Shown: piece by piece, positions 3,670 to 58,830 of the stretch
Layout: every line of letters starts with the position of its first letter
Numbering within the stretch: position 1 is the stretch's first letter
Assembly (NCBI RefSeq): GCF_006345805.1
Contig: NC_043011.1
Coordinates: 42,110,464-42,174,463 of the forward strand
DNA from: Octopus sinensis
Taxonomy: Eukaryota
Direction: 5' to 3'
DNA: 64,000 bases
Position numbers and translations under genes: made by a program
The notes under the pieces: model-generated
The model's database searches: none
What the model was told of the DNA's origin: nothing
The model's input: only the letters and a program-made list of their open reading frames with translations

Positions 3670-4240
3670 ATCCAGCCAGGAAGCTGTCCAAACTCCAAAT
3701 GTCTGTTGTGGCATGGTTTCTATGACTGGATGCCCTTCACAATGTCAACCACTTTACAGAGGCACTGGGTGCTTCTTGTGTGCCACTGGCATGGGTGCGT
3801 TTACTCAGCACTAGCACAAATGCATTTTATGTGGCACTAGCACCTGTAAAGAATAAGCCTTGATGCCATAATTTTACTTTCGGGAGAATTTTAAATAATT
3901 CTTGTTTTTTGGTATAGCATATCTTGAAACACACACATAAGCTATAAACAATAGCATGCTATTCTTTGTCTTTGTGTGTGCCTTGAGATATATTTTATTT
4001 CAATGGCATGTAAAAAGCACCATTCATGCCAGTGCCACCTGACTGGCTCCCATGCTGGTGGCACATTAAAAGCACCCACTACATTCTTAGAGTGGTTAGC
4101 ATTAGGAAGGGCATCCAGCTATAGAAACCTTGCCAGATCAGATTGGAGTCTGGTGTAGCCTCCCGGCTTGCCAATCCTCAGTCAAACTGTCCAACCATGC
4201 CAGCATGGAAATCAGACGTTAAACGATGATGATGATGAAT
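3670..4240. mobile_element. RTE 3'-UTR/tail fragments (one minus at about 3670-3850, one plus at about 4005-4240)
   Basis: Both share the ggcattaggaagggcatccagc...ccatgccagcatgg motif with 2770-3513. The plus copy ends in (GAT)n. Confidence 0.7.
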
Positions 4241-4569
4241 GATTCATTGGCTCAGGAGAGGCTCTTGATGGGCCTCAAAGATGATGATAACAAACCACAC
4301 AACTCTGGGAAAACTTGGATGGTCGTTATAAGTTTCTTCCTAGTTGGTTCCCTCTTGATCCAAAAGCTTTGCTGATTATAGTGATAAAATCTATATGATT
4401 GATTTGGAAGTTTCTACAGCTACCTGGAAGATACACTGGTGCCCGAATTGTATCTGTTCAGAGACTGGTCCTGTGACCATTGACAGCTTCCCAAAGACTA
4501 GAAGCTAAGGGGACAATGTATAAAAGCAAAAACACTGCAATTTCCTTTTGTGTGCATGTGTTGATGCTG

Positions 4570-4750
4570 GTGCCATGTAAAAAGCACCGAGTACAGTCTG
4601 TAAAGTGGTTGGCATTAGGAAGGGCATCCAGTCATAGAAACCATGCCAGGACAGACAACGGACCCTGGTGCAGCCGCCAGCCTTACCAGCTCCTGTCAAA
4701 CCATCCATCCCATGCCAGCATGGTAAACAGACATTAACTGATGGTGTGTG
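4570..4750 (+). mobile_element. RTE 3'-tail fragment
   Basis: Contains ggttggcattaggaagggcatccag...ccatgccagcatgg...gacattaactgatg. Confidence 0.7.
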
Positions 4751-5160
4751 TGCAGATGTAGATGTGTGGTAAGAAGTTTGCTTCTCAGCCACATAGTTTT
4801 GTGTTCAACTCCACTGCATGACACCCTGGGCAAATGTCTACTACTATAATTCAGACCAGCCGAGGCCTTGTGAATGGATTTAGTAGATGGAAACTGAAAG
4901 AAGCCTGTTGTGTGAATATGTATCTGTGTTTGTGTTTCTTTGTCTTCACATCATGTGATAGTTGTTAACGAGTATCACCATCACACAAGCAGAGCCCTTC
5001 ATTTTCTCATCTTCTGTGAAAACATGTGACCATGGGCAAAAGTTACCTTACGTGGAAACAGGTGAGGGTTGGCAACAGAACAAGCATTAGACCATAGAAA
5101 ATCTACTTCAACAAATTCTGTCTGACCCATAGAAAAACAGACATTAATGTGATGATCACA

Positions 5161-5197
<37 letters not shown>

Positions 5198-6574
5198 TTC
5201 ATAAATAAACTGGAAAAATAATACATGATATATGTGGTTTATATATGTTTCTCACCCATTTTGTTCCCTATGGAACCCTTTGATTCCTATTTCACTCAAA
5301 TGGCCCTTCCTAGCCATTCCATGTTTACAAAAATTCCTGTTATACTTTTATTATTAAATATTATTAGAAATTGTATAAAAAAAATTAAAACATTTCGTGT
5401 ATTACACAAGTATAACCAATTTATTGCAGATAAATTTCAACAACAAAATCTTATCTAGACCCTCCTAAGGGCCATGGGGACTCCAGCTGAGAACCACTAG
5501 CTTATATGATGGTATGTTTATATTTCCAAATGAAAGAAAATGCCCTCAGTACATGATGTAAATATTTATTGAGAGTGAGGTAATTCTGTGCATTTGCACG
5601 CATGTGTGTGTGTGTGTGTGTGTGCATAGCTCAGTTGCCATGGTATTCCTGCTGACACGATCAAGAATAATTGAATAAAAACCCTTATCAAGATAAATTA
5701 AATGTATCCAAATTACTGACCTGGTTTCTTACATTAACTTGATGTTGCATTAGCATAAAGTTGTTACTTTGAGGCTTTTGCTCTTTTGCCCGGGGTATCT
5801 TTTCTTTTATCTGTGAACCTTGTATAAATGCCCATTGTTCACCAGTTAGTGTATTGCAGTTGGAACATAGCAGTGGGGAGGGAAGGGACCAAGGTGTGAT
5901 AAAGGGAAGTGGGACCCCAAATAGGTTTCCACTCGGTGGGGGATCCAAGAAGCAGGATTACAGACTCATTAGATCAGTTAAATATTTACTGTCTGCTGTA
6001 ACTCAATGTTGTTACCTACCACAAGTTAACAACTATACCACCTAGATAAACGTTTCAGACATTTCTAAATAACAGTTGTTAGGTTCCAACTGAGAAAACA
6101 GAATTGTAGGCTTTGCTAAATAAATTTAAACTGAAATCACTATAGGATGTACAGATATACACACACACAGATTTACATACATGTATATCCAAACGTACAG
6201 AGAGAGAGAGAGAGAGAGGGGGAGGGAGATTTGGTAGACCTAGATACAAATAGCTCAAATCTCTGACAGAATCCTGGAGATATTTTTCAATCTATTTTAT
6301 AATGCTTCTACCATTTCTTGTAGACTTTGGTGAATGCTGTGCTGAAAGAGATTTAGTACTTCATCTTTGGTACTGCTTTGCCAATAATTATCTTATGTAA
6401 GTCTTCCAATTGTTGATAGTAAAAACATCAGCTGAGAAAATTTTAAGTTGGAGCTACTGCAATAGCTACCAAATTTGTTTACATTATAAGCATGCATGTA
6501 TACACACACACACACACAGATGTATGTATAGATATATACACATCCTCATATGTGTGTGTCTGTCTATATGTGTG

Positions 6575-6811
6575 TATGTGTATATATATATATATGTATG
6601 TCTATATATATATATAATATATATATAGATATATGTATATATATATTATATATATATATTATATATATATATATTATATATATATGTATATATATATGTA
6701 TATATATATATATATAGTGTATATATATATGTAATATATATATATATATATGTATATATAATATATATATATGTATATATGTATATATATATTATATATA
6801 TATATATATAG

Positions 6812-6845
<34 letters not shown>

Positions 6846-6854
6846 ATATATATG

Positions 6855-6887
<33 letters not shown>

Positions 6888-6922
6888 GTATATATATATA
6901 TAGTATATATATATATAATATG

Positions 6923-6962
<40 letters not shown>

Positions 6963-6965
6963 TAG

Positions 6966-7005
<40 letters not shown>

Positions 7006-7017
7006 TATGTATATATA

Positions 7018-7050
<33 letters not shown>

Positions 7051-7108
7051 TATGTATATTATATATATATATATATATGTATATATTATATATATATATG
7101 TATATATG

Positions 7109-7144
<36 letters not shown>

Positions 7145-7245
7145 CATATATGTATATATATTATATATATATATGTATATGTATATATACATATATATAT
7201 ATGCATATATACATATATATATATGTATATATATATATATACATA
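6575..7245. repeat. Long interrupted (TA)n microsatellite; a second tract lies at 7510-7636
   Basis: Seen directly. It accounts for the spurious YI-repeat ORFs in the track. Confidence 0.95.
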
Positions 7246-7319
7246 TGTTAATAAAATAGAACATATGCATATATATAAACATATATGTACGTACCTACCT
7301 CTACATGTACATATACACG

Positions 7320-7510
7320 CATATATGTGTACAGGACACCAAAAAGACGTCGAACACATAGAGAGACGAAACACATAGACACAAACCAAGGAACAAGACA
7401 AGCAAAAAAAAGAGAGATACAGGACAATAAGCACAACGAAAAATCCCCTTCTTCAGTCGCTAAGGTTTCATCTACTAAACGTTTCGAAGGATAAAAGCGA
7501 GACGTATACT
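7320..7510. mobile_element. Penelope-like pLTR remnant embedded in (TA)n
   Basis: A-rich tract followed by cccttcttcag...cgtttcgaagg. Similar architecture at 40880-41100. Confidence 0.35.
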
Positions 7511-7608
<98 letters not shown>

Positions 7609-7789
7609 CATATATATATATATACATATATATATTGTGGTTTCAAATCCTGGATTGGATGATGTGTTATGTTGTTGAGCAAAACACTTCAATTTACATT
7701 ACCGTGTTATCACCTTGACATCTGACGTGTGGCACACTTGTGCACCTGTACAGGTAATGTTTATTTGATGGAAGTAATTTTCATCATCA

Positions 7790-7990
7790 TCATCATCATT
7801 ATCCACCAATATCCATTGTCCATACTGGTATGGGTTGGACAGTTTGAGTAGAACTGGCGAGCAGGAGAGTTGCACCAAGTTCCAGTTTGATTTGGCTTGG
7901 ATTCTACAGCTGGGTGCCCATCCTAATGCCAACCACTTTACAGTGTGTGCTGAGTGCTTTTATCATTCCACTGACACAATAAAAGCACCC
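7790..7990 (-). mobile_element. RTE 3'-tail fragment
   Basis: (CAT)n followed by the reverse complement of the RTE tail (acagctgggtgcccatcctaatgccaaccacttt). Confidence 0.7.
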
Positions 7991-8221
7991 AGCACATGGG
8001 GAACAAGCACAAATATTTGGTCACTATAAACTAATTATCTGTGCAAGTTGTTCTGCATAAAATTGCAGAACTGTCACCTGTCATTTACGACAGGGGAGAA
8101 CACAATGAATGATGTATGTATATAAATAAAGACATCCGTAATTGGTAAAGGTCACTGTTTTGGTTGTAGGCTTTTGCAGACAATTGTGAGAAAGAAGATG
8201 GGCCGGCAGTAAATGGCATTT

Positions 8222-8625
8222 TATTTTATTTTTATTTATCTTTTTTTATTTTATCTTATTTAGTTTCAGCTCACGGGTTGTGGCCATGCTGGGGCACCAC
8301 CATTTGGTGTTGCTACATGATTTTACTTCACGAATGCTTTTTAGCAATTGCCATTTGGTGCATGAGAGAGTTCGATGCAGCTGCCCTCATCTGCACCTTC
8401 TGCCGTGAAGTTGGTTCATCTGGGACACCTGACAGGAAGAGATCCAGTTTTATTTTAAAGACATCTGCATCCACCCCATGCAGGTCTCTCAGGTCCTTCG
8501 GGAGGATATTGAAGAGCTGTGGGCCTCTGAAGCCCAGGCTATCACAGTATCTTGTCCTACATCTTGATGGCAAATTTGGAGTCCTTGGCACTATGCAGTG
8601 GCGCCCAGTTCTTGGCATTTATAAA
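8222..8625 (-). mobile_element. CR1/L2-like LINE 3' end
   Basis: Peptide ...RGPQLFNILPKDLRDLHGVDADVFKIKLDLFLSGVPDEP is homologous to the C-terminus of the LINE at 42362-42952 (GPALFNIVPKEI...FKRSLDRFLQGIPDKP). It ends in an (AATAA)n-like tail. Confidence 0.85.
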
Positions 8626-8831
8626 ATAATTATACAGAAGTGAGAATAAATATGATTTAACAGAGAAAACAGAAAAACAGAAGTCCATAATAGTTCTTAG
8701 AAAGGTAGATATGCTATGGTAACAGAAAGAGAGGAGAGAATCTGAACAATTCTTTACCGATGTTTCTGTGGTTGGTTATCAGTAAGTGCAGCAAAGGGCA
8801 ATAAGTGCAGTAATGTGCATTATGTGTAAAT

Positions 8832-9180
8832 TCTTTTACTTGTTTCTGTCATTTGACTGCAGCCATGCTGGAGCATCGCCTTTAGTCGAACAAATTGACC
8901 ACAGGACTTATTCTTTGTAAGCCTAGTACATATTCTATCGGTCTCTTTTGCTAAACTACTAAGTTACGGGGACATAAACACAACAACATCAGTTGTCAAG
9001 CAATGATAGGAGGGACAAACACAGACACACAAGCATATATACACACACATATATATGACAGGCTTCTTTCAGTTTCCATCAACCAGATCCACTCACAAGG
9101 CTTTGGTTGGCCCATGTGCTACACAGTGGGACTGAACTTAGTTGGGAAGCAAGCTTCTTACCACACAGCCACGCCTGCAC
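8832..9180 (-). mobile_element. tRNA-derived CORE-like SINE family A, older CpG-decayed copy
   Basis: Aligns to the young copies (e.g. 30391-30796) with many CpG to TpG/CpA changes. Confidence 0.85.
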
Positions 9181-9452
9181 CTATATATATATATAAAGTA
9201 AACAATTGAATTATAGGTGAATTATAGTTAATATAGTTTCATTTTATAATGCTAATACGCTCATGCATTTTAGAACAACAGTAATTGTGACCACTCCCCT
9301 TGACATTTCCTCTATCCTCATACTAAACATTTTTTGTGCAATGAGACATGAACCTCAATTAAATAAATAGTTTGGAATTGTTATGAAATACTAAGAATTT
9401 AGAAAATTTCTATTTGTAAATCTCACAACGAGAGATACTCAGCAACAGTACT

Positions 9453-9752
9453 TTGGAGTAAAGGTTGTTTGCCAACATAACATGGCAGTCCTGGTTTAGG
9501 ACGAATGTTGCTGTAATTTAGCCCCAGGAGACATCGTCTCCAGCTGGCTATACGACATGATCTGTGTCCTTACATTTTTCAAACAAGGGAATCTAGCACC
9601 CCACTCAGCTCAAAACAATATCTGTGTATCACGATTTCCGGGTTAATTTCTCTTCATCAGCACAGAGTAATTGTTCAGCTAGTGGTGGCGTTGCCAAATT
9701 CCTGTTTGAAATATATAGTTTTCAAAATGACAACTAGTCACTGATCTATAAA
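9453..9752 (-). mobile_element. Penelope-like pLTR-derived insert flanked by 54-bp direct repeats
   Basis: Direct repeats at 9399-9452 and 9753-9806 (2 mismatches). The interior is homologous to 2445-2760 and contains a hammerhead-like motif. Confidence 0.55.
9621..9666 (-). ncRNA. Minimal type I hammerhead ribozyme motif with an imperfect stem II
   Basis: Minus strand reads TCTGTG-CTGATGA-AGAGAAATTAACCCG-GAAA-TCGTGAT-A-CACAGA: a 6-bp stem I, both conserved core strings, and a near-palindromic short stem III with AUA cleavage triplet. Confidence 0.55.
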
Positions 9753-11304
9753 TTAGAAAATTACTATTTGTAAATCTCACAACGAGAGATATTCAGCAAC
9801 AGTACTAACAATTTCTCGATTAGGAACAGAGAAAAGGAGAACAGTGACTGCACTAGGCACTCAATAACTGTGCTAATGATATCTGCAGCTAAAATATAGT
9901 TTTAGTTTTATCCTTTCATGAAGAAATATTGTTTTGTTGTTTAGTTTTCAAACTATTAAGTCATGCTTTTATTCTGTTTGAAACCAATGGGGTTAGTTGC
10001 ATCAATAAAGACCATTGGAAAATAGTTTATTATTCTTCTCACTGTTATATTTACTGTTAAAATACTTGTGTGTTGACTGATTATTCCCAGAACACCTTGG
10101 AGTAGCAGGGTGTTGCTTGTTTGGTATAAACCATTCACAATAATAATAACAATCCCCGTATCTTACCTCTCCTGCTTCAGTATACTATCACTGCAGGCTA
10201 CAAAAACAACACAGTGGTAATACAATGCTCCCACCGTCATCTATTTACAACAGTGAACTATCAACTTTAGAGATTACCAATCCTTCCTTCTGAATTGCAA
10301 TCTCCTGGAATCTCCTTAATTTCCCACATTTACTCTCAGCTTTACACTTTCGGGAACAACTCCTGAAGGTAATGGAAACTGTCCCTCTTCCTTGGACAAA
10401 TCATTTTAAAAAGATGGAATGAGGATCACTCTGAAGCAGAATGAATTATGTTTACTGAAGAGAGAGAGAGATGTGTATCAAATGGAAATTTAATACATAG
10501 TATTTTAAAGGTGGTGCTCCTGCTTAGCCTTGGCTGTGATGATTGAAACAAAATAAACACATACACACCATAGTTCTTTAGGTGAAGTCAACATGGGAAT
10601 AAGAGATTCCTTTACAGCTTATAATCACAGGAATTGAGTTCTGTACTCATAAGAATTCTCTGGTCTTTGTACTTGTTAGCTGAATATTTTTGACCCTTGA
10701 CCAAGGGTTAAGCAACAACAATCAAATAGTAATGTACCATATATGATGTAGAAAATATAAGGGATAAAGATCCCCTTTGGTCATGAATAACCATATGATG
10801 CACCTAGAAATTTCCCCTCTGAGAGTCCCAGAGAAACATATCAGATTTGATGCATCAGCTTAATTATGATTGTAAAGGGATTTAAGAAAATGAAAACAGC
10901 AGGAGAGTTAGAGACAACATGGATATGAGTAATGTAAACCTTGGCTTGTAGATCAAATTTAAGGGAAGTTTAGTTGTCGAAACATGTTTACACAGATGGG
11001 ACAAATATTTAAAGTTTTTCAGAGGGGAAGAGTTAATTTTTGTTTATTTGTTATTATAATGTATTTGATGTATTTTGTGGTTTAACCTCAAATTAGCCCT
11101 GATTAAAGAGATTTATGATCAAAGGCATTCCAGCCATGACAATCCCATCTTCTTTTCAGACATAGTACATCTATAACTACAATATCTCTCTATATATTTT
11201 ACCTTCCTTCAAAGATGGCTAGATGTGATTTTAAGGAAATTTGTGTGCTCTTTCTAGTAGGTTAGTTGACCACATAGTGGCTCCATCATATGCTCATTTA
11301 CATC

Positions 11305-11336
<32 letters not shown>

Positions 11337-11699
11337 TGCCAATAACCATTTCCTGGAATCAGAAATGGTAAAGATACAAATAACTGAAGGAATGGGGGTA
11401 GGGGTGGGGGCAGTCGAGTGCAGATGTTTCTCTGCAGCACCAAAATTTCCTTCAACAAACCCACTCTTCTCCCTAAATCTTAGGATATTGGAATGTTCCA
11501 AATTTAGAACAGCATACCTTGTTTTGTTTTTTTACTGGTCTCAGTCACTGGATTGCAGTCATGCTGAAGCATCCCATTTATGGTTATACATAATAATATT
11601 CACCTCAGTACTTATACATTAATACTTAGTCAAGACAGTAAACTGGCAAATCATTAGCATTTCGGACAAAATGCTTCACTCCATTTTTTCAGGCCTTTT

Positions 11700-11910
11700 A
11701 CCATTTAAACCGACCATATCTGGCCAAAATATTTGACCTGTTTTAGGGTCAAACTGACTAGATCCAGCCTTTCTAACCTACCCTACAATGTCATTCTAAA
11801 ATTAAAACAAATGACATCACTGAAATCTTGAAGCTATGAGATAAGCCATGATTAATTCAAAACAATGTGAATAAATAAGTATTAAACTGGATAAAGTAAT
11901 CTGAATGCTA
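11700..11910. mobile_element. Non-autonomous DNA element, sibling of 1790-2022
   Basis: Shares tttaaacc...caaactg...ctacaatgtcattctaaaa...aatgtgaataaataag...gaatgctaaa. Confidence 0.45.
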
Positions 11911-13126
11911 AATATCACTGAGGTTGACTTAGCTTTTCATCTTTTTAGGATCAATAAAATAAAGTACTGGTCAAGTACTGGAATCAATATAATCAACTAC
12001 CCCCTCCCCAATTGCTAGCTTTGTACCAAAATTTGGAAAAATATTTATTTTATTGACCTCAAAAGGATAAAAGGCAGAGTTGATTGAAGTGGGATTTGAA
12101 CTCAGAATGTAAAGTGATGTAAGCTATTTTGTTGGATGTTCTACCATTCTGTCACTCAGCACCTTTTATCTCCATTAAAACTCAAATAACCATGAAACAA
12201 CAGCAATTAGGAGTAGGTATGGTTGTGTAGTTTAGAACTCTTTCACAATCATACAGTTTCCGGTTCAATACCGCTGTGAAGTATCCTTAGCAAGTGTGTC
12301 TTCTACATAGTCTTCAGTCAACTAATGTCTTACAAATAGAATTTGATAGATGGAAACTGTATAGAAGCCCTGTGTATGTATGTGTGTTTGTATCTTTTGC
12401 CACTTTTTATCAATGAATGAAATAACTGAGCAAGAAAGACAAAAAAAAAACAGTGTTTTATGTACAATCAATCCTTTTTCACCACCCACTATTTCTAGGG
12501 GGCACCTACTCTTTAGGGTCTAATCAGAGGCAACCATTATTACACCTTCTGGCAGGATTCCCAAGCATGATCATGTGACACTATGGATATTAATCCAATC
12601 ACTTAATTTTTGGTCTACCCCCTAGCTTTCCTGCTGGTTGGATTGGCTTGAAGAATCCATTTTGCCATACTTTTTTTTTGCAACATTCTAATCACATCTG
12701 TTGTACAAGAGCTGTGACCTCTCAATGCAGAGAATTAGCAGCTCAACCTGAAGAGACTCCCTGATCTCTCAGCTACACTACCTGTTGAGTTAGATTACTC
12801 CATAGATTCTTTGGAGAAGCTCCATGCAATCCACTTGTATTTGCAATCATATTCTTTTGGTCATTCCCTGACATTCATGACCATGGGTGAGGATAGGCAT
12901 GAAAACTAAATTCAAGATAATAAATTTGGCCTTTTTTACCAAAGTTCCTTATGATATTTGTTCTGCACTGAGTTGGATACATTCCCTTGTCACTTTCCCC
13001 ATCAAGGTTGTACTTGATCAGTGATTAGACCATTGGAATGCCAGAACCAGTGACTATTTTATTCAAAAATTAAATAAAAAAAAATATTTCTGGAGCAGAA
13101 CTGATCTGGATGCTGCAAGCATTCAA

Positions 13127-20631: not shown

Positions 20632-22464
20632 GCATGGCTGTGTGGTAAGAAACTTGCTTCCCAACATGGTTCAGTTCCACAGTGTGACACCTTGTGAGTA
20701 GATTTGGTAGACAGAAACTGAAACAAGCCAGTAAAAGATAAAGGATTATTATCTATTTTCAAATGCAGCCTCCATGTCTTCTGACCATTCACCATAATAG
20801 GAATCTAAGAAGCTGATCAACCAGAACTCCAGTCTACACCCATTTTGAAAGTCTTGCAAAAGGTCATTGTTGGCACTGGCACCAGCTGTCCAGTCTCATG
20901 TGTACTGAGAGAGGTCACTAAGTAAGGATGGCCATTCTGGTGGCATTCATTTTTATTGGTTAAATACACAAAAAAAGACCAAAAAATGTAGATGTCAATT
21001 TGAATGAAACTCATAGAAATGAAGGTGGGGGGAGAGTGACCTGTAAAAATAATTATCTCTCCAGATGGTGGAAAGGAAATTCTTAGTGGTGGTGGTAGTG
21101 GTGGCAGTGGTAGTTGTTCTTGTTTCCTATTTTTAAAAGGAACATTAAGGAATTTACCCATCCCTAATTTCTCAGAAATCTCAAATCTGTGGTCAAACTG
21201 CCTTCTATGATATTTTTAGGTTGGGTTTTTATATTTATACTTATTCTTTATATTTTTAGTTCAAGAAAGAACAAGGAGTTGCAAAATTCTATCACACACC
21301 AGATTCATTAATTCTACATTCTTTGTGCAGGGAATGCCATCAAGGCATGGTTTTGAATTTCCAAGAGATAGGCATGAATGTCATACAATCTCATTTTCTT
21401 GCTCTTCTGAATCTGGGAAGGATACACAGACACACACACACACACATGCCTACACTCATACATACCAATGCAAGAAGTCAATTTGAATTAGTCATTCTAG
21501 AATTACAGAATTGAAAATAAAAGTAGGAAGTGAGTTAGCAAGAACAGTACCAAGTATGAGGGGGCTTCTATGTTGATCTGCTAAAAGTACCAGCCAAGTT
21601 TACCTCAAATCATACCTTACCATCCTTAAAAAACACATTGGATAATGTAGTCCTGTACACATTATGACTGACAAAAAAAACAGGATGGCCATGACTGGAT
21701 GCCTTTCATCATAAGCTTGCTGAATCAAGTCTCATTTATAGTAACTGATGAAACATCATCAACTACAACACTGCTACATCTGCCTTTTTGTGGTCGATCA
21801 AGATGCTAAAAATAGCAACCAAATCTCACTTAGATCCTACCATTAAAAAATGATTAGGATAATGTAATCCTAGACACATTTAGACATATATTTACACTGA
21901 CACACATAAACAGATTCTATATGGTCACTCAAAACACATTTGCTTTAAAACAGGAAGGACATATTGAATAATATAATCCTAGATGCACTACACCTGGATA
22001 ATGTGATTATAGTTTTACAACCGTATGAACATGAGAACATGAACTGTGTGAGTTCCGAATTTTTTTTCTTTTTTCTATAGACTGGATCACACCAATATTA
22101 AAGCTGTTGCTGTACAGACCCTAATTGGCTTGGTTCACATAGACCAGTATTATAGGGGTGACCAATCAAAAGATCTGAGCAGACCACTATTTAGATCCAC
22201 TGCACCAGATATGTCATGGTTTAATCTTTTATGAGAATACACTGCACATGGTAAAATACAATGTCATGATCAGTATTAATTCTTAAATTTCCAAGTTGGA
22301 TAATAAAATATATCCTGAAATGGATTTCAGTAGATGTGAATTAGTATCTACTCAAATGAATCAGCACTAGTCAAGAACAGAAAGAACTTCCCAGATTAGG
22401 ATTGTCCCGTAAAGGGTCCTTTACATCTCCAGTGATGCCATAGCAACTTAAAAAATGGTGTATA

Positions 22465-22856
22465 GGCGCAGGAGTGGCTGTGTGGTAAGTAGTTTGCTAA
22501 CCAACCACATGGTTCCGGGTTCAGTTCCACTGCGTGGCATCTTGGGCAAGTGTCTTCTGCTATAGCCCCGGGTCGACCAATGCCTTGTGAGTGGATTTGG
22601 TAGACAGAAACTGAAAGAAGCCTGTCGTATATATGTATATGTGTGTGTATGTGTTTGTGTGTCTGTGTTTGTCCCCCTAGCATTGCTTGACAACCGATGC
22701 TGGTGTGTTTACGTCCCCGTAACCTAGTGGTTCGGCAATAGAGACCGATAGAATAAGTACTGGGCTTACAAAGAATAAATCCCGGGGTCAATTTGCTCGA
22801 CTAAAGGCGGTGCTCCAGCATGGCCGCAGTCAAATGATTGAAACAAGTAAAAGAGT
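22465..22856 (+). mobile_element. SINE family A, young full-length copy
   Basis: tRNA-like head with A box (gtggctgtgtgg) and B box (gggttcagtcc), a CORE-like ttgggcaagtg segment, an internal (TA)/(TG) microsatellite, and tail ggtgctccagcatggccgcagtcaaatga.tgaaacaagtaaaaga. Confidence 0.92.
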
Positions 22857-23041
22857 ATTTCATGGAGTAATAAAATCAAATTTAAAGTCAGTCTGCTTCA
22901 GAATGCTTTGTGTTGGCATTTATATATATATATATATTTAAATAATGAGGGAGATAAATTGAATATTAATTTAATTACTATCAATTTAAAACCAGTAGCC
23001 TAGCATCTAAAAAATCTAAAAAGTCAGAAAAAATTTCAATA

Positions 23042-29830: not shown

Positions 29831-30390
29831 ATGCATACCTGCTTGCTATATACACACACATTATTTATGTATAAGCAGGTAGACTAGTTCTAATTGGTTA
29901 ATTGGCTTGTAGGTATTTATATAAATAGATCGTAGGTTTAACAAGGAAATGCGCGCGCATATATGTGTGTGTGCGTGCGCGTGCATTAAAGGTGTATGAT
30001 GAATGAACTAATAAAAAGATACCGGAAACTAAGGGACAAAATATGCTGGTGGCTGAGTTAGGGCTCAATTGTTAATTAGGCTAAATATATATGTGTTGCG
30101 TGTCTTAGTTATAAAACCCATTTTCTTCATATGTGGCTATACGTATATGTAGATGGGCGTGTGTGGGTGTGTGTGAACATTTAAGTACTTATGCGTATGC
30201 AGATAACTGTGTGTGTATGTGCACGTATTGCAGTTGCCGAACTGAGATGAAAGTACTAACTTTTCTATCAAAGTTCTTTGTTAGAGAGTAGATAGTCTCG
30301 TCTCCTACCACAGCTTCCTATACAAACTAGTGACTATTTGGTGGGTGTTTGTTTCATATTGTTTCATATATGTTGTATGTCGACTAATAT

Positions 30391-30796
30391 ACTCTTTTAC
30401 TTGTTTCAGTCATTTGACTGCGGCCATGCTGGAGCACCACCTTTAGTCGAGCAAATCGACCCCGGGACTTATTCTTTGTAAGCCCAGTACTTATTCTATC
30501 GGTCTCTTTTGCCGAACCGCTAAGTGACGGGGACGTAAACACACCAACATCGGTTGTCAAGCAATGCTAGGGGGACAAACACAGACACACAAACATATAC
30601 ACACACACTTATATATATATATATACATATATACGACAGGCTTCTTTCAGTTTCCGTCTACCAAATCCACTCACAAGGCATTGGTCCGCCCGGGGCTATA
30701 GTAGAAGACACTTACCCAAGATGCCACGCAGTGGGACTGAACCCGGTACCATGTGGTTGGTTAGCAAGCTACTTACCACACAGCCACTCCTGCGCC
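30391..30796 (-). mobile_element. SINE family A, young full-length copy
   Basis: Head-to-tail match with CpGs retained. Confidence 0.92.
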
Positions 30797-30847
30797 TAAT
30801 ATACAGTCAAGAAATAAATAACTCGGTGTGCAACGCGGTTAAAATTT

Positions 30848-43128: not shown

Positions 43129-43176
43129 CCAGCATGGCCGCAGTCAAATGACTGAAACCAGGAAAATAATAAAAGA

Positions 43177-43560
43177 CAGGAGTGACTGTGTGGTAAGTAG
43201 CTTGCTTACCAATCACATAACCCTAACCCTCAGTCCCACTGCGTGGCAGCTTGGGCAAGTATCTTCTACTATAGCTTCGGGCCGACCAAAGCCGTATGAG
43301 TGGATTTGGTAGACGGAAACTGAAAGAAGCCTGTCGTGTATACATATGCATGTGTATGTGTGTGTGCGTCTATATTTGTTCCTCCACCATCGCTTGACAA
43401 CCGATGCTGGTGTGTTTACGTCCCCGTAACTTAGCAGTTCGGCAAAAGAGACCGATAGAATAAGTACTAGGCTTACAAAGAATAAGTCCTGGAGTCGATT
43501 TGTTCGACTAAGGCAGTGCTCCAGCATGGCCGCAGTCAATGACTGAAACAAATAAAAGAG
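43177..43560 (+). mobile_element. SINE family A copy
   Basis: Head-to-tail match. Confidence 0.9.
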
Positions 43561-43580
43561 TATATATATATTATATATAT

Positions 43581-46738: not shown

Positions 46739-47085
46739 CACCCATCACAACATTTCAAACATGATGGAAATAAGCACCTCGTTCACCACCTTCATTATTT
46801 CTCTCTTCTCAGTGGACACTCCTTATCAACTGAACCGATCGGTGACCTTCTTTTACCTATACTAAGAAAACTTCGGCGAAAGCAATGGTTTAGTTCTTGA
46901 TGCGACTGGGTTTTTTTCTTACTCGGTGCTGAACAAAAGAGAACTTCATTCAAACAGCGTTGGCTTTTCTTTGATGTTTACGGCTTTGGCCGATATACCT
47001 GTGAAAGTGAAAGACACGCACACACACACACACACAACACACACACACAGAGTTTCAGTCAAATTCCACTCACAAGGTATTGCTC

Positions 47086-47393
47086 GGTACTAGTAGCGTA
47101 GACTGGACCCGGTTTGCGCAAACGCGCGTCCGCGCTAGCCAGACGTAGGCAGTCGATCCTACGAGCTGACTGGCGCATGCACGATATATACTTGTATACG
47201 ATATATACTTGTATCGCACGTCCCCGATTCGCGCGATACAAGTATATATCGTATATATACAAGTATATATCGTATATATCGATACAAGTATATATCGTAC
47301 ATGCGCCAGTCAGCTCGTAGGATCGACTGCCTACGTCTAGCTAGCACGGACGCGCGTCTGCGCAAACCGGGTCCAGTCTACGCTACTAGTACC
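47086..47393. mobile_element. 308-bp fold-back MITE with 9-bp TSD (Merlin- or Mutator-like)
   Basis: Almost entirely palindromic, with termini GGTAC...GTACC and TSD GTATTGCTC (47077-47085, 47394-47402). It is inserted in a SINE A fragment. Confidence 0.92.
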
Positions 47394-47898
47394 GTATTGC
47401 TCCACCTGAGGCTACGGTAGAAGATACTTGCCCAAGATGCCACGTGATAGGACAGAATCTGGAACCACGTGGTTGCAAAACGTTCTTCTTTATGACGCCT
47501 GTATGTTTGCACGATGCGTTTCGTATCAGCATAGCAGCATGCTTCGGCCAGGCCCTCGCCGGCACACTTCCTTTCGATTCTGTTGTACTCGAAAGTGCGG
47601 GCATGTACATTATGACGTGTTTGTTGTAATTTCTAATCACACACACACACACACACACGGCACAACCATCTTAGCATGCGTGCTCCACAGGTAACTCTAG
47701 ACACCTCACTCATCAGACATGTAAAGTTTCAACGTCAGCGATCTTGTAAACCCTGCTCAGTAGGGTATGACATCCAAGCCCCCTTTCATGAGCACACGGG
47801 TTTCAATTACTTTACAGGCAATCACTCTATTCACAAACACCGGCTAAAAACTATCGAATTCTGTACAAGCATTTCCAGTCTGGAAAGATCTTTTATTG

Positions 47899-48206
47899 GG
47901 TACTACTTGAGAACAGTGGTCCCGGTGCGCGCACTCGCGTAGTCGCGCATCCGCGCTAGCTAGTCGTGACTAATCGATCCTACAACGACTACCTAGCAAA
48001 GTAAATAAAACACAAAATAAATAATTTTTACACAAAGTAAATAATTTTTGTTAAACAAAGTAAATAAAATACAAAAACACAAAGTAAATAATTTTTTAAA
48101 CAAAGTAAATAACACACAAAACACAAAGTAAGGATCGACTAGTCACGACTAGCTAGCGCGGATGTGCGAGTGCGCGCACCGGGACCACTGTTCTCTATGT
48201 GGTACC
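47899..48206. mobile_element. 308-bp MITE with about 78-bp TIRs and 9-bp TSD (same superfamily as 47086-47393)
   Basis: Termini GGTAC...GTACC and TSD CTTTTATTG (47890-47898, 48207-48215). The interior holds acaaagtaaataa tandem repeats. Confidence 0.9.
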
Positions 48207-48487
48207 CTTTTATTGTAGTCACGCATCAGTTATCAAAGTCATAGCCCAATGTATAGGCTTCCTTTTTCAGTACCACCACAATGGCACTAGCTCGGATCAG
48301 CTGTTGACCATTTAAACGTGGTCCGAAAGGTTTTGTAGAAAATACGAAAGATTTCATGGAACAAGTGGTCCAATACGTTTTATGAAAACTGAGTTTAATT
48401 ATCAATATTTGATTGTTTTATATTTAAAGAAACCTGTTACACAAACAAAATACGATGATTACACAATAGGGATTATTTCAAATGATA

Positions 48488-48894
48488 GGCGCAGGAGTGG
48501 CTGTGTGGTAAGTAGCTTGTTTACCAACCACATGGTTCCGGGTTCAATCCCACTGCGCGGCACCTTGGGCAAGTGTCTTCTACTATAGCCTCGGGCCGAC
48601 CAGAGCCTTGTGAGTGGATTTGGTAGACGGAAACTGAGGGAAGCCCGTCGTATATATGTATATATATATATATATATATGTATGTATGCGTGTGTGTGTG
48701 TTTGTGTGTCCCCCTAGCATTGCTTGACAACCGATGCTGGTGTGTTTATGTCCCCGTTACTTAGCGGTTCGGCAAAAGAGACCGATAGAATAAGTACTAG
48801 GCTTACAAAAAGAATAAGTCCCAGGGTCGAGTTGCTCGACTAAAGGCGGTGCTCCAGCATGGCCGCAGTCAAATGACTGAAACAAGTAAAAGAG
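48488..48894 (+). mobile_element. SINE family A, young full-length copy
   Basis: Head-to-tail match. Confidence 0.92.
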
Positions 48895-50088
48895 AAGAAA
48901 AACAGACAGACAGACATCCGACCCTCCCCACCGCATACAAAAATTACTAATTTTTACAAAGAAACTTTTTTTATATACGATGGGAACTTGTCTGAGATGT
49001 GTTTCATATATTGTCACGTAGTGCGTCTTTGGGAAAGTGATTCTGTTTTATGTCCGAACCGTTCTCTCCCCCGCGGGTCTACAAATTTACGTTGATATGC
49101 GATAACAGCATTATAGAGTTTACTCTTTCTCTCTTTTTTTCTCTTTTTACTTGTTTCAGTCATTCGACTGCGGCCATGCTGGAGCACCGCCTTTAGTCGA
49201 GCAAATCGACCCCTGGGACTTATTCTTTGTAAGCCCAGTACTTATTCTATCGGTCTCTTTTGCCGAACCGCTAAGTGGCGGGGACATAAACACACCAGCA
49301 TCGGTTGTCAAGCAATGCTAGGGGGACAAACACAGACACACAAACATATACACACACATACATACATATATATATATATATAATATATATATATATGTAT
49401 GTATGCGTGTGTGTGTGTTTGTGTGTCCCCCTAGCATTGCTTGACAACCGATGCTGGTGTGTTTATGTCCCCGTTACTTAGCGGTTCGGCAAAAGAGACC
49501 GATAGAATAAGTACTAGGCTTACAAAAAGAATAAGTCCCAGGGTCGAGTTGCTCGACTAAAGGCGGTGCTCCAGCATGGCCGCAGTCAAATGACTGAAAC
49601 AAGTAAAAGAGAAGAAAAACAGACAGACAGACATCCGACCCTCCCCACCGCATACAAAAATTACTAATTTTTACAAAGAAACTTTTTTATATACGATGGG
49701 AACTTGTCTGAGATGTGTTCATATATTGTCACGTAGTGCGTCTTTGGGAAGTGATTCTGTTTTATGTCCGAACCGTTCTCTCCCCCGCGGGTCTACAAAT
49801 TTACGTTGATATGCGATAACAGCATTATAGAGTGTACTCTTTCTCTCTTTTTACTCTTTTTACTTGTTTCAGTCATTTGACTGCGGCCATGCTGGAGCAC
49901 CGCCTTTAGTCGAGCAAATCGACCCCGGGACTTATTCTTTGTAAGCCCAGTACTTATTCTATCGGTCTCTTTTGCCGAACCGCTAAGTGGCGGGGACATA
50001 AACACACCAGCATCGGTTGTCAAGCAATGCTAGGGGGATAAACACTGACACACAAACATATACACACACATACATACATATATATATA

Positions 50089-50090
<2 letters not shown>
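48662..50090. repeat. About 717-bp tandem duplication spanning two inverted SINE A 3' halves
   Basis: About 48662-49380 and about 49381-50090 are near-identical, with breakpoints in (TA)n. Confidence 0.9.
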
Positions 50091-50132
<42 letters not shown>

Positions 50133-50293
50133 GACAGGCTTCTTTCAGTTTCCGTCTACCAAATCCACTCACAAGGCATTGGTCGGCCCGAGGCTATAGT
50201 AGAAGACACTTGCCCAAGGTGCCACGCAGTAGGACTGAACCCGGAACTATGTGGTTGGTAAGCAAGCTACTTACCACACAGTCACTCCTGCGC
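49853..50293 (-). mobile_element. SINE family A, young full-length copy
   Basis: Head-to-tail match. Confidence 0.92.
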
Positions 50294-50521
50294 TTAACAG
50301 TTTCTAAACTGTTCATATACACACAAAACGTTTCCTGATCCTGTCCCTTCTCAGCATGGAGAAGAAAAAAACAAAATCAAAAAACTGCTCGTATACCATA
50401 CGAAATCACCCCACCACACCTTGCCTCACAATCCTAGGTTTCATTTAAACGAAAGCCATTTAGCTGATTAGCAAGGACCCATTCACCAATTTAGTACTAC
50501 CTCTTGTCCACAATTGTACCC

Positions 50522-52640: not shown

Positions 52641-52725
52641 TAGGGAAATTTAAAGAAGCAAAGATACGTAATACAAAAAGAAAATTAAAGAAGATCAAAG
52701 AAACATTACAAAAAAAACGTGAACA

Positions 52726-53115
52726 GGCGCAGGAGTGGCTGTGTGGTAAGTAGCTTGTCTACCAACCACATGGTTGCGGGTTCAGTCACACTGCGTGGCA
52801 TCTTGGGCAAGTGTCTTCTGCTATAGCCCCGGGTCGACCAATGCCTTGTGAGTGGATTTGGTAGATGGAAACTGAAAGAAGCCTGTAGTATATATGTATA
52901 TATATATATGTGTGTATGTGTGTGTGTTTGTCCCCCTAGCATTGCTTTACAACCGATGCTGGTGTGTTTATGTCCCCGTTACTTAGCGGTTCGGCAAAAG
53001 AGACCGATAGAATAAGTACTGGGCTTACAAAGAATAAGTCTTAGGGATCGATTTGTTCGACTAAAGGCGGTGCTCCAGCATGGCCGCAGTCAAATGACTG
53101 AAACAAGTAAAAGAG
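52726..53115 (+). mobile_element. SINE family A, young copy about 170 bp inside integrin intron 1
   Basis: Head-to-tail match. Confidence 0.92.
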
Positions 53116-53288
53116 TATAGGGTGATAAAAGGAAAGAGAGGAGTGAAAGAAACAGAGACGGATAATAGAGAAAGTAGAAGAGAAAGAAAGACAAGCTGAG
53201 AGAGAGAGAGAGAGAAAGTGAAGCAGCGAAAGAGAGAAAGTGAAGCAGAGAGAGAGTGAAGTTGAGAACGAGAAAGTGAATTACTTAC

Positions 53289-57419: not shown

Positions 57420-58830
57420 CGTCATCATATCGTCGTCGTCGTTGTCATCACCAATATCTATGAATTACAAATTTCACTTAGTTCGAGCACAATGGCAGGT
57501 TTACTCCTTGTCCCTTTCCATCATCAGTTTCCCTATTTAATCAGTCACAGTACTACTGAAACTTCATGATTAGGAAGGACGGCGTCCACGGTTCATTTTC
57601 TCGTAGGTCGGCTTCCAGATTATGATTTGGCTGGGGAACTTCTTGCTCTGTTGTTATCTACGATATAGCTGATCATTAAGCTTCTGAAAACTGTTGAAGG
57701 TGCCCTGCTCAAGCGGGTCTCTTACTTAAAGTACCTCAGATCATTTGTAGTGGGTTCAGAGACAGAGACAATATCTTGGCGAGCGTAACCCTGGAGTGGC
57801 AACCACACAATGAGATGAAAAATATCTAAACCTGCCATTGTGCTCGAACTAAGTGCAATTTGTAATTCATAGATATTGGTGATGACAACGACGACGACGA
57901 TATGATGACGAAGTAGCACAATCGAAACCCAATGTCAGTTTTTGGTGAGACGATATTACCAATTCTAATGAGTTTCATTATGGGGGAGGTCACTATAAAG
58001 TTGTTCAATGCTTACAGTCTGTATCTAACTGCAGTAAAAGAAAAAAAGCAAATGACGAAGGCCTTCTGGAGCATCCAAGTGTAGCAATCGCTGTCGAACT
58101 TGGCCACAGACTTTTTATGAAGATCCAAATTTCACATCCAAAAGAAGGATTTTAATTAACGTTTTGAAGATTCTTTTGAATTGACTCGAAAGGCTGAAGG
58201 TTTAGATATTTTTCATCTCATTGTGTGGTTGCCACTCCAGGGTTACGCTCGCCAAGATAGTCTCTGTCTCTGAACCCACTACAAATGATCTGAGGTACTT
58301 TAAGTAACAAACCCGCTTGAGCAGGGCACCTTCAACAGTTTACAGAAGCTTAATGGTCAGCTATATCGTAGGTATTGTATTTCGTCTTCTTAGCATCGAA
58401 GTATAATTCTACTTTGTTATATTCGGTTTCTATTCTGGACTGAAAAGAATGAACGTTTAAGATTTTGTCCGAAAACAAAGTAATGTCTTTGATAAAGTTC
58501 AGGTTACATTTCACTGAACTCACCCATCTTGGTTTCCTTTGTGTAATAACGAAGTCCAGTTCCTCATTAACTGCTCCCCAGAGGACGTAGTCTACAACCT
58601 TGATGAAGATGGCTGGCACCAACGCGTCACCTTGCAGCACCCCTGCCCAGGGCTCAAACTTTTCCGTTTCATCATTCAATGTAATCGTCCGCGCTATGGT
58701 GGTGTTGTGCGTGGCCCCCAAAGAACGGAGGTCACGAGGTAGGGTTCCGTACGTTTTACAGATCTTGATCTCTCCCCAACCCAATAAAATCAAAGGTTTC
58801 TTTGCAAACGATAAACATTAAGAGAACTGC
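57420..58830 (-). mobile_element. Rearranged RTE-clade LINE (RT domain to 3' tail)
   Basis: GVLQGDALVPAIFIKVVDYVL...LNFIKDITLF (RT); then GCEIW...DCYTWMLQKAF; then IWKPTYEKMNRGRRP...LMMERDK; then a (GAC/GAT)n tail. Confidence 0.85.

What the first reader, a model, noticed from the sequence alone, without database searches (positions are those of the whole stretch)
47086..48206. Twin 308-bp fold-back elements: same length and collinear TIRs, unrelated internal tandem repeats
Two elements about 500 bp apart both start GGTAC, end GTACC, have perfect but different 9-bp TSDs, and by my count are both exactly 308 bp. Their roughly 78-bp TIRs align almost without gaps but only partly in sequence: GGTAC..TGG.CCCGGT..GCGCA..CGC...TCCG.GCTAGCTAG.CGT....AGTCGATCCT. 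The interiors differ completely (gatacaagtatatatcgt units vs acaaagtaaataa units). GGNRM termini with 8-9-bp TSDs are the established signature of Merlin (IS1016-related) transposons, and Mutator also makes 9-bp TSDs. Inference: these are two diverged MITE lineages served by one transposase, with a length constraint, swappable spacer arrays and a local insertion preference.
Basis: partly seen in the sequence, partly recalled or inferred. Interest (0 to 1): 0.8.

Follow-up and report, generated by a model that had tools for sequence, protein, structure and literature searches.

The report
Two related MITEs in an octopus genome
These are two small, non-coding, hairpin-shaped "jumping gene" relics (MITEs) of two related subfamilies lying 505 bp apart in an octopus genome; they are ordinary mobile-DNA debris, and their identical 308-bp length is a coincidence.

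Summary
Element A (47086-47393) and element B (47899-48206) are each exactly 308 bp, start GGTAC and end GTACC. Each is flanked by a perfect 9-bp duplication. Their roughly 76-bp terminal inverted repeats are about 73% identical, and their interiors are unrelated.

A is a proven insertion. Nineteen paralogous SINE copies span its empty site, and the second duplication copy appears as a 9-nt insertion against seven of them.

The window is octopus DNA. It shares SINE-like repeats at 85-95% identity with Octopus sinensis and O. vulgaris loci.

Two more B-type copies exist in O. sinensis. They are 251 and 260 bp long and 89-91% identical to B. Lengths differ through tandem-unit number and indels in the terminal repeats, so no 308-bp constraint exists.

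The Merlin assignment is not confirmed. I reconstructed two genuine octopus Merlin families, one of 1,620 bp and one of 8.7 kb. Both have unrelated terminal repeats and make 8-bp duplications at all seven insertions. One of them is merely nested inside a B-type MITE.

A and B are non-autonomous cut-and-paste elements. They are moved in trans by an unsampled DDE transposase that makes 9-bp staggered cuts. Merlin and Mutator-like origins are about equally likely.

This is a new member of a known kind, of low interest.

The parts
47077..47085 (.). Left 9-bp target-site duplication of element A (GTATTGCTC)
   Evidence: Read directly. Seven paralogous SINE copies carry a single copy of this site.
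47086..47393 (.). Element A: a 308-bp fold-back MITE, GGTAC...GTACC
   Evidence: The DNA hairpin folds at -165 kcal/mol, z = -28. It has no coding capacity: the longest ORF is 68 aa and has no homologue in 5.8 billion proteins.
47086..47197 (+). Left arm of A. The first roughly 76 nt are homologous to the B-type terminal repeat.
   Evidence: Inverted repeat I1 is 96% complementary.
47181..47214 (+). A interior: 17-bp unit ACGATATATACTTGTAT x 2, the inverse of the right-hand units
   Evidence: Tandem Repeats Finder; inverted pairs I13, I14 and I20.
47234..47299 (+). A interior: units of 21-25 bp containing ATACAAGTATATATCGT, x 2.8
   Evidence: Tandem Repeats Finder; repeat family D7.
47282..47393 (-). 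Right arm of A
   Evidence: Inverted repeat I1; alignment.
47394..47402 (.). Right 9-bp target-site duplication of A (GTATTGCTC)
   Evidence: It appears as a 9-nt insertion relative to 7 paralogous SINE copies.
47010..47490 (-). Host SINE-like repeat fragment, roughly 47010-47085 plus 47403-47490, interrupted by A
   Evidence: The joined flanks align across the junction with 10 copies in the window and 9 in O. sinensis and O. vulgaris loci.
47890..47898 (.). Left 9-bp target-site duplication of element B (CTTTTATTG)
   Evidence: Read directly.
47899..48206 (+). Element B: a 308-bp MITE, GGTAC...GTACC, B lineage
   Evidence: It is 89-91% identical to two O. sinensis copies of 260 and 251 bp. 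Its DNA fold is -87 kcal/mol, z = -17.6.
47899..47982 (+). Left terminal inverted repeat of B, 84 nt, carrying an 8-nt insertion TCGCGTAG relative to the right arm
47998..48131 (+). B interior: an A-rich tandem array of about 21-23-bp units, each containing AAAGTAAATAA. It also reads as 45 bp x 2.2.
   Evidence: Tandem Repeats Finder and repeat families D1, D3 and D9. The same array is shorter in the O. sinensis copies.
48131..48206 (-). Right terminal inverted repeat of B, 76 nt
   Evidence: (I4, I6).
48207..48215 (.). Right 9-bp target-site duplication of B (CTTTTATTG)
   Evidence: Read directly.

Best explanation
A and B are two miniature inverted-repeat transposable elements (MITEs). They belong to two related subfamilies of one class II (cut-and-paste) transposon family in an Octopus genome. 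Neither encodes anything.

**Proposed mechanism.**
- Each element was moved in trans by a DDE-type transposase encoded elsewhere.
- That enzyme would recognise the conserved blocks of the roughly 76-bp terminal inverted repeat. These blocks are GGTAC, TGGNCCCGGT, GCGCA, GCTAGCYAG, CGT and TCGATCCT.
- It would cut the element out and reinsert it across a 9-bp staggered break. Repair of that break leaves the 9-bp duplications.

**The individual elements.**
- A landed inside a SINE copy. B landed in unique DNA 505 bp away.
- The interiors are lineage-specific tandem repeats that expand and contract. This, together with indels in the terminal repeats, sets the length.
- The shared 308 bp is therefore a coincidence.

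**Shown versus inferred.**
- Shown: the structure, the homology of the terminal repeats, the 9-bp duplications, the insertion of A, further B-type copies in O. sinensis, and variable length.
- Inferred: the transposase. Its superfamily is unresolved. I put Merlin at about 0.4, a Mutator-like or Foldback-type element at about 0.4, and anything else at about 0.2.
For: - The structure and perfect 9-bp duplications are confirmed.
- The A and B terminal repeats are homologous, about 10 sd above shuffles. Blocks are conserved across 8 arms.
- A's empty site is spanned by 19 SINE paralogues. The second duplication copy shows as a 9-nt insertion.
- There are no homologues and no real coding capacity.
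- B-type copies occur in O. sinensis. L007 11632-11882 is 251 bp with flanks TGAAATTTT / CGAAATTTT. The L006 copy is 260 bp once the nested Merlin is removed.
- The window is octopus DNA.
- A 5'-GG terminus with an 8-9-bp duplication defines Merlin (PMC8101967). An 8-11-bp duplication, mostly 9 bp, with long terminal repeats typifies Mutator-like elements (PMC6446971).
Against: - No autonomous copy carrying these terminal repeats was found, so the trans-mobilisation step and the superfamily are inferred.
- Only one A-type copy is known, so its status as a repeated family is not shown.
- The L006 B-type copy has no preserved duplication, and its right end is degraded.
- Only about 240 kb of octopus DNA could be searched.
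Confidence: 0.85

Rival explanations
1. They are Merlin MITEs. A Merlin transposase (IS1595-like, DDE_Tnp_IS1595) of a lineage that makes 9-bp duplications mobilises both subfamilies.
For: - The 5'-GG terminus and a 9-bp duplication lie within the Merlin definition (PMC8101967).
- GGTAC fits the GGNRM terminal consensus. I recall this from Yuan & Wessler 2011 and could not verify it here.
- Merlin is unusually abundant in Octopus, with 191 hits in O. bimaculoides.
- Several Merlin families carry internal tandem repeats.
- Active-looking Merlins exist in O. sinensis and O. vulgaris.
Against: - Both octopus Merlin families I reconstructed make 8-bp duplications at 7 of 7 insertions.
- Both start GGC[A/G]NTGT, and their terminal repeats show no similarity to A or B.
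- The apparent Merlin with B-type ends in L006 is a Merlin nested in a B-type MITE. It has its own 8-bp duplication, AAACAAAG.
- The recent O. vulgaris annotation lists only 2 Merlin families with recent insertions, against 21 Mutator families (PMC13282606).
Confidence: 0.4
2. They are MITEs of the Mutator-like (MULE), Foldback or Rehavkus type, mobilised by a MULE transposase.
For: - A 9-bp duplication is the commonest length for Mutator-like elements, and their terminal repeats are typically long (PMC6446971).
- Rehavkus-type elements combine 9-bp duplications, 26-400-bp terminal repeats and a minisatellite.
- A's fold-back architecture, with tandem units inside the arms, recalls Drosophila Foldback elements. 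Those also make 9-bp duplications (my own knowledge).
- O. vulgaris has 21 Mutator families with recent insertions.
Against: - No octopus MULE could be retrieved or compared.
- I had no MULE query sequence and no protein searches left.
- Nothing in the sequence is specific to Mutator-like elements.
Confidence: 0.4
3. One transposase serves both lineages, a length constraint near 308 bp applies, spacer arrays are freely swappable, and there is a true local insertion preference.
For: - Both elements are exactly 308 bp, and their terminal repeats are collinear.
- The two elements lie 505 bp apart. Two random placements in 64 kb have about a 2.5% chance of that.
- The other two B-type copies also sit in or beside other DNA transposons.
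Against: - B-lineage lengths are 308, 260 and 251 bp.
- B's two arms differ by 8-nt and 1-nt indels, and B carries a copy-specific 45-bp expansion.
- The B interior is inherited within the lineage, not swapped.
- The clustering evidence is post hoc. The loci were ascertained through Merlin genes.
Confidence: 0.05
4. They are not mobile elements at all. They would be chance or structural palindromes, such as hairpin-RNA genes or local duplicates.
For: The hairpins are extremely stable.
Against: - Both elements have perfect 9-bp duplications.
- A interrupts a SINE whose 19 paralogues are uninterrupted.
- B-type copies sit at unrelated loci in another assembly with different flanks.
- There is no Rfam match in the window.
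Confidence: 0.01

Closest known systems
Merlin superfamily MITEs (Feschotte 2004; survey in PMC8101967)
   Same: They share 5'-GG termini, an 8-9-bp target-site duplication, terminal repeats within the 24-462-bp range, internal tandem repeats in several families, and abundance in Octopus.
   Different: No DDE_Tnp_IS1595-encoding copy with these terminal repeats was found. The two octopus Merlin families examined use 8-bp duplications and have unrelated terminal repeats.
Mutator-like elements, including Rehavkus and Drosophila Foldback elements
   Same: They share a 9-bp duplication, long terminal repeats, and tandem repeats or minisatellites inside or next to the repeats. Element A also has a fold-back shape.
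   Different: There is no transposase link. Foldback arms consist almost wholly of tandem repeats, whereas here the outer roughly 95 nt of the arms are unique sequence.
Tandem-repeat-containing MITEs of molluscs and insects, such as pearl in bivalves, DTC84 in Donax and Tetris in Drosophila virilis (from my own knowledge)
   Same: They are short elements bounded by terminal inverted repeats, with a core tandem array of variable copy number. Subfamilies share ends but differ in their cores.
   Different: Those families belong to other or unknown superfamilies. No sequence relationship was tested.
Octopus Merlin-1 (L012 9557-11176, 1,620 bp) and Merlin-2 (L002 4265-12996, 8.7 kb), reconstructed here
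   Same: They come from the same host genus, have GG termini, are class II elements, and co-occur in the same transposon clusters.
   Different: Their duplications are 8 bp, not 9 bp. Their terminal repeats start GGCACTGTCATGCC and GGCGATGTTTCG and show no similarity to A or B.

Membership tests
MITE (non-autonomous class II element with terminal inverted repeats) | Terminal inverted repeats | tested here: met
   A has arms of 113 nt, 96% complementary. B has arms of 84 and 76 nt.
MITE (non-autonomous class II element with terminal inverted repeats) | Target-site duplication of fixed length | tested here: met
   The duplication is 9 bp: A 9/9, B 9/9, and the L007 copy 8/9. The L006 copy has lost its duplication.
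MITE (non-autonomous class II element with terminal inverted repeats) | Small size and no coding capacity | tested here: met
   Sizes are 251-308 bp. The longest ORF is 68 aa and has no homologue.
MITE (non-autonomous class II element with terminal inverted repeats) | Evidence of insertion (an empty site) | tested here: met
   For A, 19 paralogous SINE copies span the junction, and the second duplication copy is a 9-nt insertion. This could not be tested for B, which sits in unique flanks.
MITE (non-autonomous class II element with terminal inverted repeats) | Multiple dispersed copies | tested here: inconclusive
   The B lineage has 3 copies at unrelated loci in about 240 kb sampled. The A lineage has a single copy. 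No genome-wide search was possible.
Merlin superfamily | Conserved terminal 5'-GG | tested here: met
   The termini are GGTAC...GTACC. The definition is from PMC8101967.
Merlin superfamily | 8- or 9-bp target-site duplication | tested here: met
   The duplication is 9 bp.
Merlin superfamily | An autonomous relative with the same terminal repeats encoding a DDE_Tnp_IS1595 transposase | tested here: inconclusive
   Nine octopus Merlin loci covering two families were fetched. Neither family has A/B-type terminal repeats. In L006 the Merlin is nested inside a B-type MITE. Other octopus Merlin families could not be reached.
Mutator-like elements (MULE / Foldback / Rehavkus) | 8-11-bp duplication, mostly 9 bp | tested here: met
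   The duplication is 9 bp. The definition is from PMC6446971.
Mutator-like elements (MULE / Foldback / Rehavkus) | Long terminal inverted repeats | tested here: met
   The repeats are 76-113+ nt.
Mutator-like elements (MULE / Foldback / Rehavkus) | An autonomous relative with the same terminal repeats encoding a MULE transposase | not tested
   I had no octopus MULE query and no DNA search of eukaryotic genomes. The supplement of PMC6446971 holds no octopus sequence.

The most novel reading that the evidence does not exclude
The A/B family could represent an undescribed octopus transposon lineage, either a Merlin that makes 9-bp duplications or a Mutator-like element. Its transposase would tolerate about 27% divergence in the terminal repeats as long as a few collinear blocks are kept, so one enzyme would drive several MITE subfamilies. 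These elements, together with the octopus Merlins, might also insert preferentially into or next to other elements with hairpin-forming terminal repeats. Three arrangements point that way. A and B lie 505 bp apart. In L006 a Merlin-2 MITE sits inside a Merlin-1 inside a B-type MITE. In L007 a Merlin relic, a Merlin-2 MITE and a B-type MITE lie within 2.4 kb.
Probability: 0.12. Interest if true: 0.4.

Novelty: new member of a known kind. Interest (0 to 1): 0.15.

Why it matters
The finding matters little beyond repeat annotation.

- It adds two related MITE subfamilies with 9-bp duplications to the octopus repeat catalogue, with one cleanly proven insertion.
- It is a caution for annotators. 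A transposase gene bracketed by MITE-type terminal repeats can be a nested insertion rather than the MITE's parent.
- If the clustering of DNA transposons seen in these few loci held genome-wide, it would bear on how cephalopod genomes accumulate transposon nests. Nested MITE insertion is already well known in other organisms.

Tried and rejected
1. **DNA pattern scans.** I scanned the JGI metagenome and IMG/VR viral collections with a 26-nt terminal-repeat pattern. The result was one chance hit with no GGTAC or CCCGGT context, and nothing else.

2. **Protein search with A's ORF.** I searched the 68-aa ORF of A against 5.8 billion proteins, hoping that spurious ORF calls in octopus assemblies would reveal other copies. 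Nothing was found.

3. **My own first reading of L006, now rejected.** I read L006 as an autonomous Merlin carrying B-type terminal repeats, and so as the parent of B.
   - The intact sister copy in L012 lacks the B-type ends. It has its own repeats starting GGCACTGTCATGCC and an 8-bp duplication.
   - In L006 the same Merlin is flanked by AAACAAAG on both sides, inside the B-type array.

4. **A shared motif.** I looked for a link through the GTAAATAA motif, present in B's units and in Merlin-1 subterminal repeats. Merlin-1 has only two occurrences, both at one end, and A has none. I judged this a coincidence.

5. **A's interior against the TA-rich region at 6.6-7.6 kb.** That region is a plain (TA)n microsatellite, so the match is only low complexity.

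6. **Loci that were not octopus.** The ENA loci L008-L011, L015 and L016 share no repeats with the window and hold no A/B terminal repeats.

7. **Records and papers not held.**
   - P0010, an O. bimaculoides protein, is not on record.
   - Yuan & Wessler 2011 is not held, so the GGNRM consensus stays unverified.
   - No TE library is attached to the O. vulgaris repeat paper.

8. **No structured RNA.** There is no Rfam or tRNA hit in the window.

Full report
**Observation.**

- Element A occupies 47086-47393 and element B occupies 47899-48206.
- Each is exactly 308 bp, begins GGTAC and ends GTACC.
- A is flanked by GTATTGCTC on both sides and B by CTTTTATTG on both sides. Both duplications match 9 of 9.

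A is an almost complete palindrome.
- Its gapless arms are 113 nt and 96% complementary.
- The pairing continues through two 17-bp units on the left and about three inverse units of 21-25 bp on the right.
- As single-stranded DNA it folds at -165 kcal/mol, z = -28.

B has terminal inverted repeats of 84 and 76 nt.
- They differ by an 8-nt insertion (TCGCGTAG) and a 1-nt indel.
- They surround an A-rich, one-directional tandem array of AAAGTAAATAA-containing units.
- B folds at -87 kcal/mol, z = -17.6.

The A and B terminal repeats are clearly homologous.
- 56 of 81 aligned columns are identical, with a single 1-nt gap.
- The alignment score is 60. One thousand shuffles gave mean -18.6 and sd 7.8.
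- The interiors share nothing.
- No further copy lies in the window.

**A is a real insertion.**

- The flanks of A belong to a SINE-like repeat.
- I joined the flanks, keeping one copy of the 9-mer. The joined sequence aligns straight across the junction with 10 other copies in the window and 9 in octopus loci.
- In a MAFFT alignment that keeps both 9-mers, the second copy stands out as a 9-nt insertion against 7 paralogues. Each paralogue carries one GCATTGGTC-like site.
- This proves both the insertion and the 9-bp duplication.
- B sits in unique DNA, so it cannot be tested this way.

**Source organism.**

- The window has 38.8% G+C and many microsatellites. It has no tRNA or Rfam hit and only a weak reverse-transcriptase fragment.
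- It shares roughly 400-bp SINE-like repeats at 85-95% identity with loci fetched from O. sinensis and O. vulgaris. It shares none with loci fetched from unrelated ENA assemblies.
- The window is therefore Octopus DNA, close to the vulgaris/sinensis group.

**Looking for relatives and the transposase.**

DNA pattern scans of the metagenome and viral collections gave only a chance hit. A protein search with A's 68-aa ORF gave nothing.

The Merlin survey (PMC8101967) gave me both a definition and a query.
- It defines Merlin by 5'-GG termini, terminal repeats of 24-462 bp and 8-9-bp duplications.
- It reports 191 Merlin hits in O. bimaculoides.
- Its supplement gave a transposase sequence, KOF79200.1, which I used as a query.
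- From the hits I fetched nine octopus Merlin loci.

B-type terminal repeats turned up in two of these loci.
- In L007 there is a complete B-type MITE at 11632-11882. It is 251 bp, runs GGTAC...GTACC, and has flanks TGAAATTTT / CGAAATTTT, a 9-bp duplication with one mismatch.
- In L006 B-type ends bracket a Merlin gene. I first took this for the autonomous parent of B.

**Correction: L006 is a nest, not a parent.**

- P0227 is a 301-aa protein in the same 90% cluster as the L006 protein. It led to L012, which holds the intact element at 9557-11176.
- That element is 1,620 bp, has terminal repeats starting GGCACTGTCATGCCTTTGGTTG, and an 8-bp duplication AAATTCAC. It has no B-type sequence.
- In L006 the same Merlin occupies 9577-11645. 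It lies between two copies of AAACAAAG, inside the tandem array of a B-type MITE.
- Removing the Merlin and one duplication copy leaves a 260-bp B-type element.

A second octopus Merlin, the P0077 family, is 8.7 kb long.
- Its terminal repeats are about 354 bp and start GGCGATGTTTCG.
- Its 8-bp duplications are GCAAATCT, GAAACTTT and CAAGGCTT.
- Copies are 99.6% identical.
- Its MITE derivatives interrupt the L006 transposase gene and lie beside the L007 B-type MITE. Both again have 8-bp duplications.
- L005 provides the empty site for the L006 interruption.

So both verifiable octopus Merlins make 8-bp duplications, at 7 of 7 insertions. Neither is related to A or B in its terminal repeats.

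**Length.**

- The three B-lineage copies are 308, 260 and 251 bp and 89-91% identical where aligned.
- They differ by the number of interior units. The window copy has an extra block of about 45 bp, matching the 45-bp x 2.2 repeat found.
- They also differ by 8-16-nt indels in a variable zone of the terminal repeat.
- The match with A's 308 bp is therefore coincidental.
- The interior array is inherited within the B lineage, not swapped. It differs only between lineages.

**Mechanism.**

The anatomy is that of cut-and-paste MITEs moved in trans. A transposase would bind the conserved blocks of the terminal repeats, excise the element, and integrate it across a 9-bp stagger.

The insertion and the duplication are shown. 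The enzyme is inferred.
- A 9-bp duplication with GG termini fits Merlin (PMC8101967).
- A 9-bp duplication with long terminal repeats, with or without tandem repeats, fits Mutator-like, Rehavkus and Foldback elements equally well (PMC6446971).
- The recent O. vulgaris annotation lists 21 Mutator families and 2 Merlin families with recent insertions (PMC13282606).
- I rate the two superfamilies about even.

**Clustering.**

- A and B are 505 bp apart. Two random placements in 64 kb have about a 2.5% chance of that.
- The other two B-type copies sit in dense nests of DNA transposons.
- Those loci were chosen because they hold Merlin genes, and nested MITE insertion is a familiar phenomenon. I treat this as a weak lead only.

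**Verdict.**

The two related MITE lineages and the 9-bp duplications hold. The length constraint is refuted. Merlin is unconfirmed.
- These are ordinary MITEs, at most an uncatalogued family, and of low interest.

Noticed in passing
L006 9415-11751 (O. sinensis VCDQ01004827.1): This is a triple nest. A B-type MITE (9415-9576 plus 11654-11751) hosts a Merlin-1 element (9577-11645, 8-bp duplication AAACAAAG). The transposase ORF of that Merlin is in turn interrupted by a roughly 470-bp Merlin-2-type MITE at about 10779-11250. The homologous gene in L005 is uninterrupted.
   Followed up: yes
L012 9557-11176 (O. sinensis VCDQ01006077.1): An apparently intact 1,620-bp Merlin. Its terminal repeats start GGCACTGTCATGCCTTTGGTTG, its 8-bp duplication AAATTCAC is perfect, and it has an uninterrupted 301-aa DDE_Tnp_IS1595 ORF. 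It is possibly still mobile.
   Followed up: partly
L002 4265-12996, L004 4252-12997 (O. sinensis), L003 about 3888-12940 (O. vulgaris): An 8.7-kb Merlin with roughly 354-bp terminal repeats (GGCGATGTTTCG...) and an inner inverted pair. Each site has a different 8-bp duplication. The copies on two O. sinensis chromosomes are 99.6% identical, and the O. vulgaris copy is 98-99% identical, which suggests very recent activity. Short MITE derivatives of it occur in L006 and L007.
   Followed up: partly
L007 9525-11095 (O. sinensis CM016877.1): A Merlin-1-like gene with an intact 289-aa ORF but no recognisable terminal repeats on either side. It could be a relic or a domesticated copy. Two different MITEs follow it immediately, at 11190-11605 and 11632-11882.
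   Followed up: no
window 22461-22857, 30390-30803, 43176-43571, 48485-48904, 49850-50296, 52725-53127 and others: At least ten copies of a roughly 400-bp SINE-like repeat with a TA/TG microsatellite tail, 85-95% identical to copies in O. sinensis and O. vulgaris. One of them is the target of element A.
   Followed up: partly
window 58350-58793 (-), with neighbouring ORFs up to about 61.7 kb: A weak reverse-transcriptase match (RVT_1, E = 1.7e-4, below the gathering score). It is probably a decayed LINE.
   Followed up: no
window 6581-7246 and 7511-7635: A long (TA)n microsatellite of about 337 and 62 repeats. It produces spurious long ORFs and low-complexity matches to A's interior.
   Followed up: yes
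window 47077-47085 and 47890-47898: Both 9-bp target sites contain TATTG, at different offsets. With only three target sites known, no target preference can be judged.
   Followed up: no
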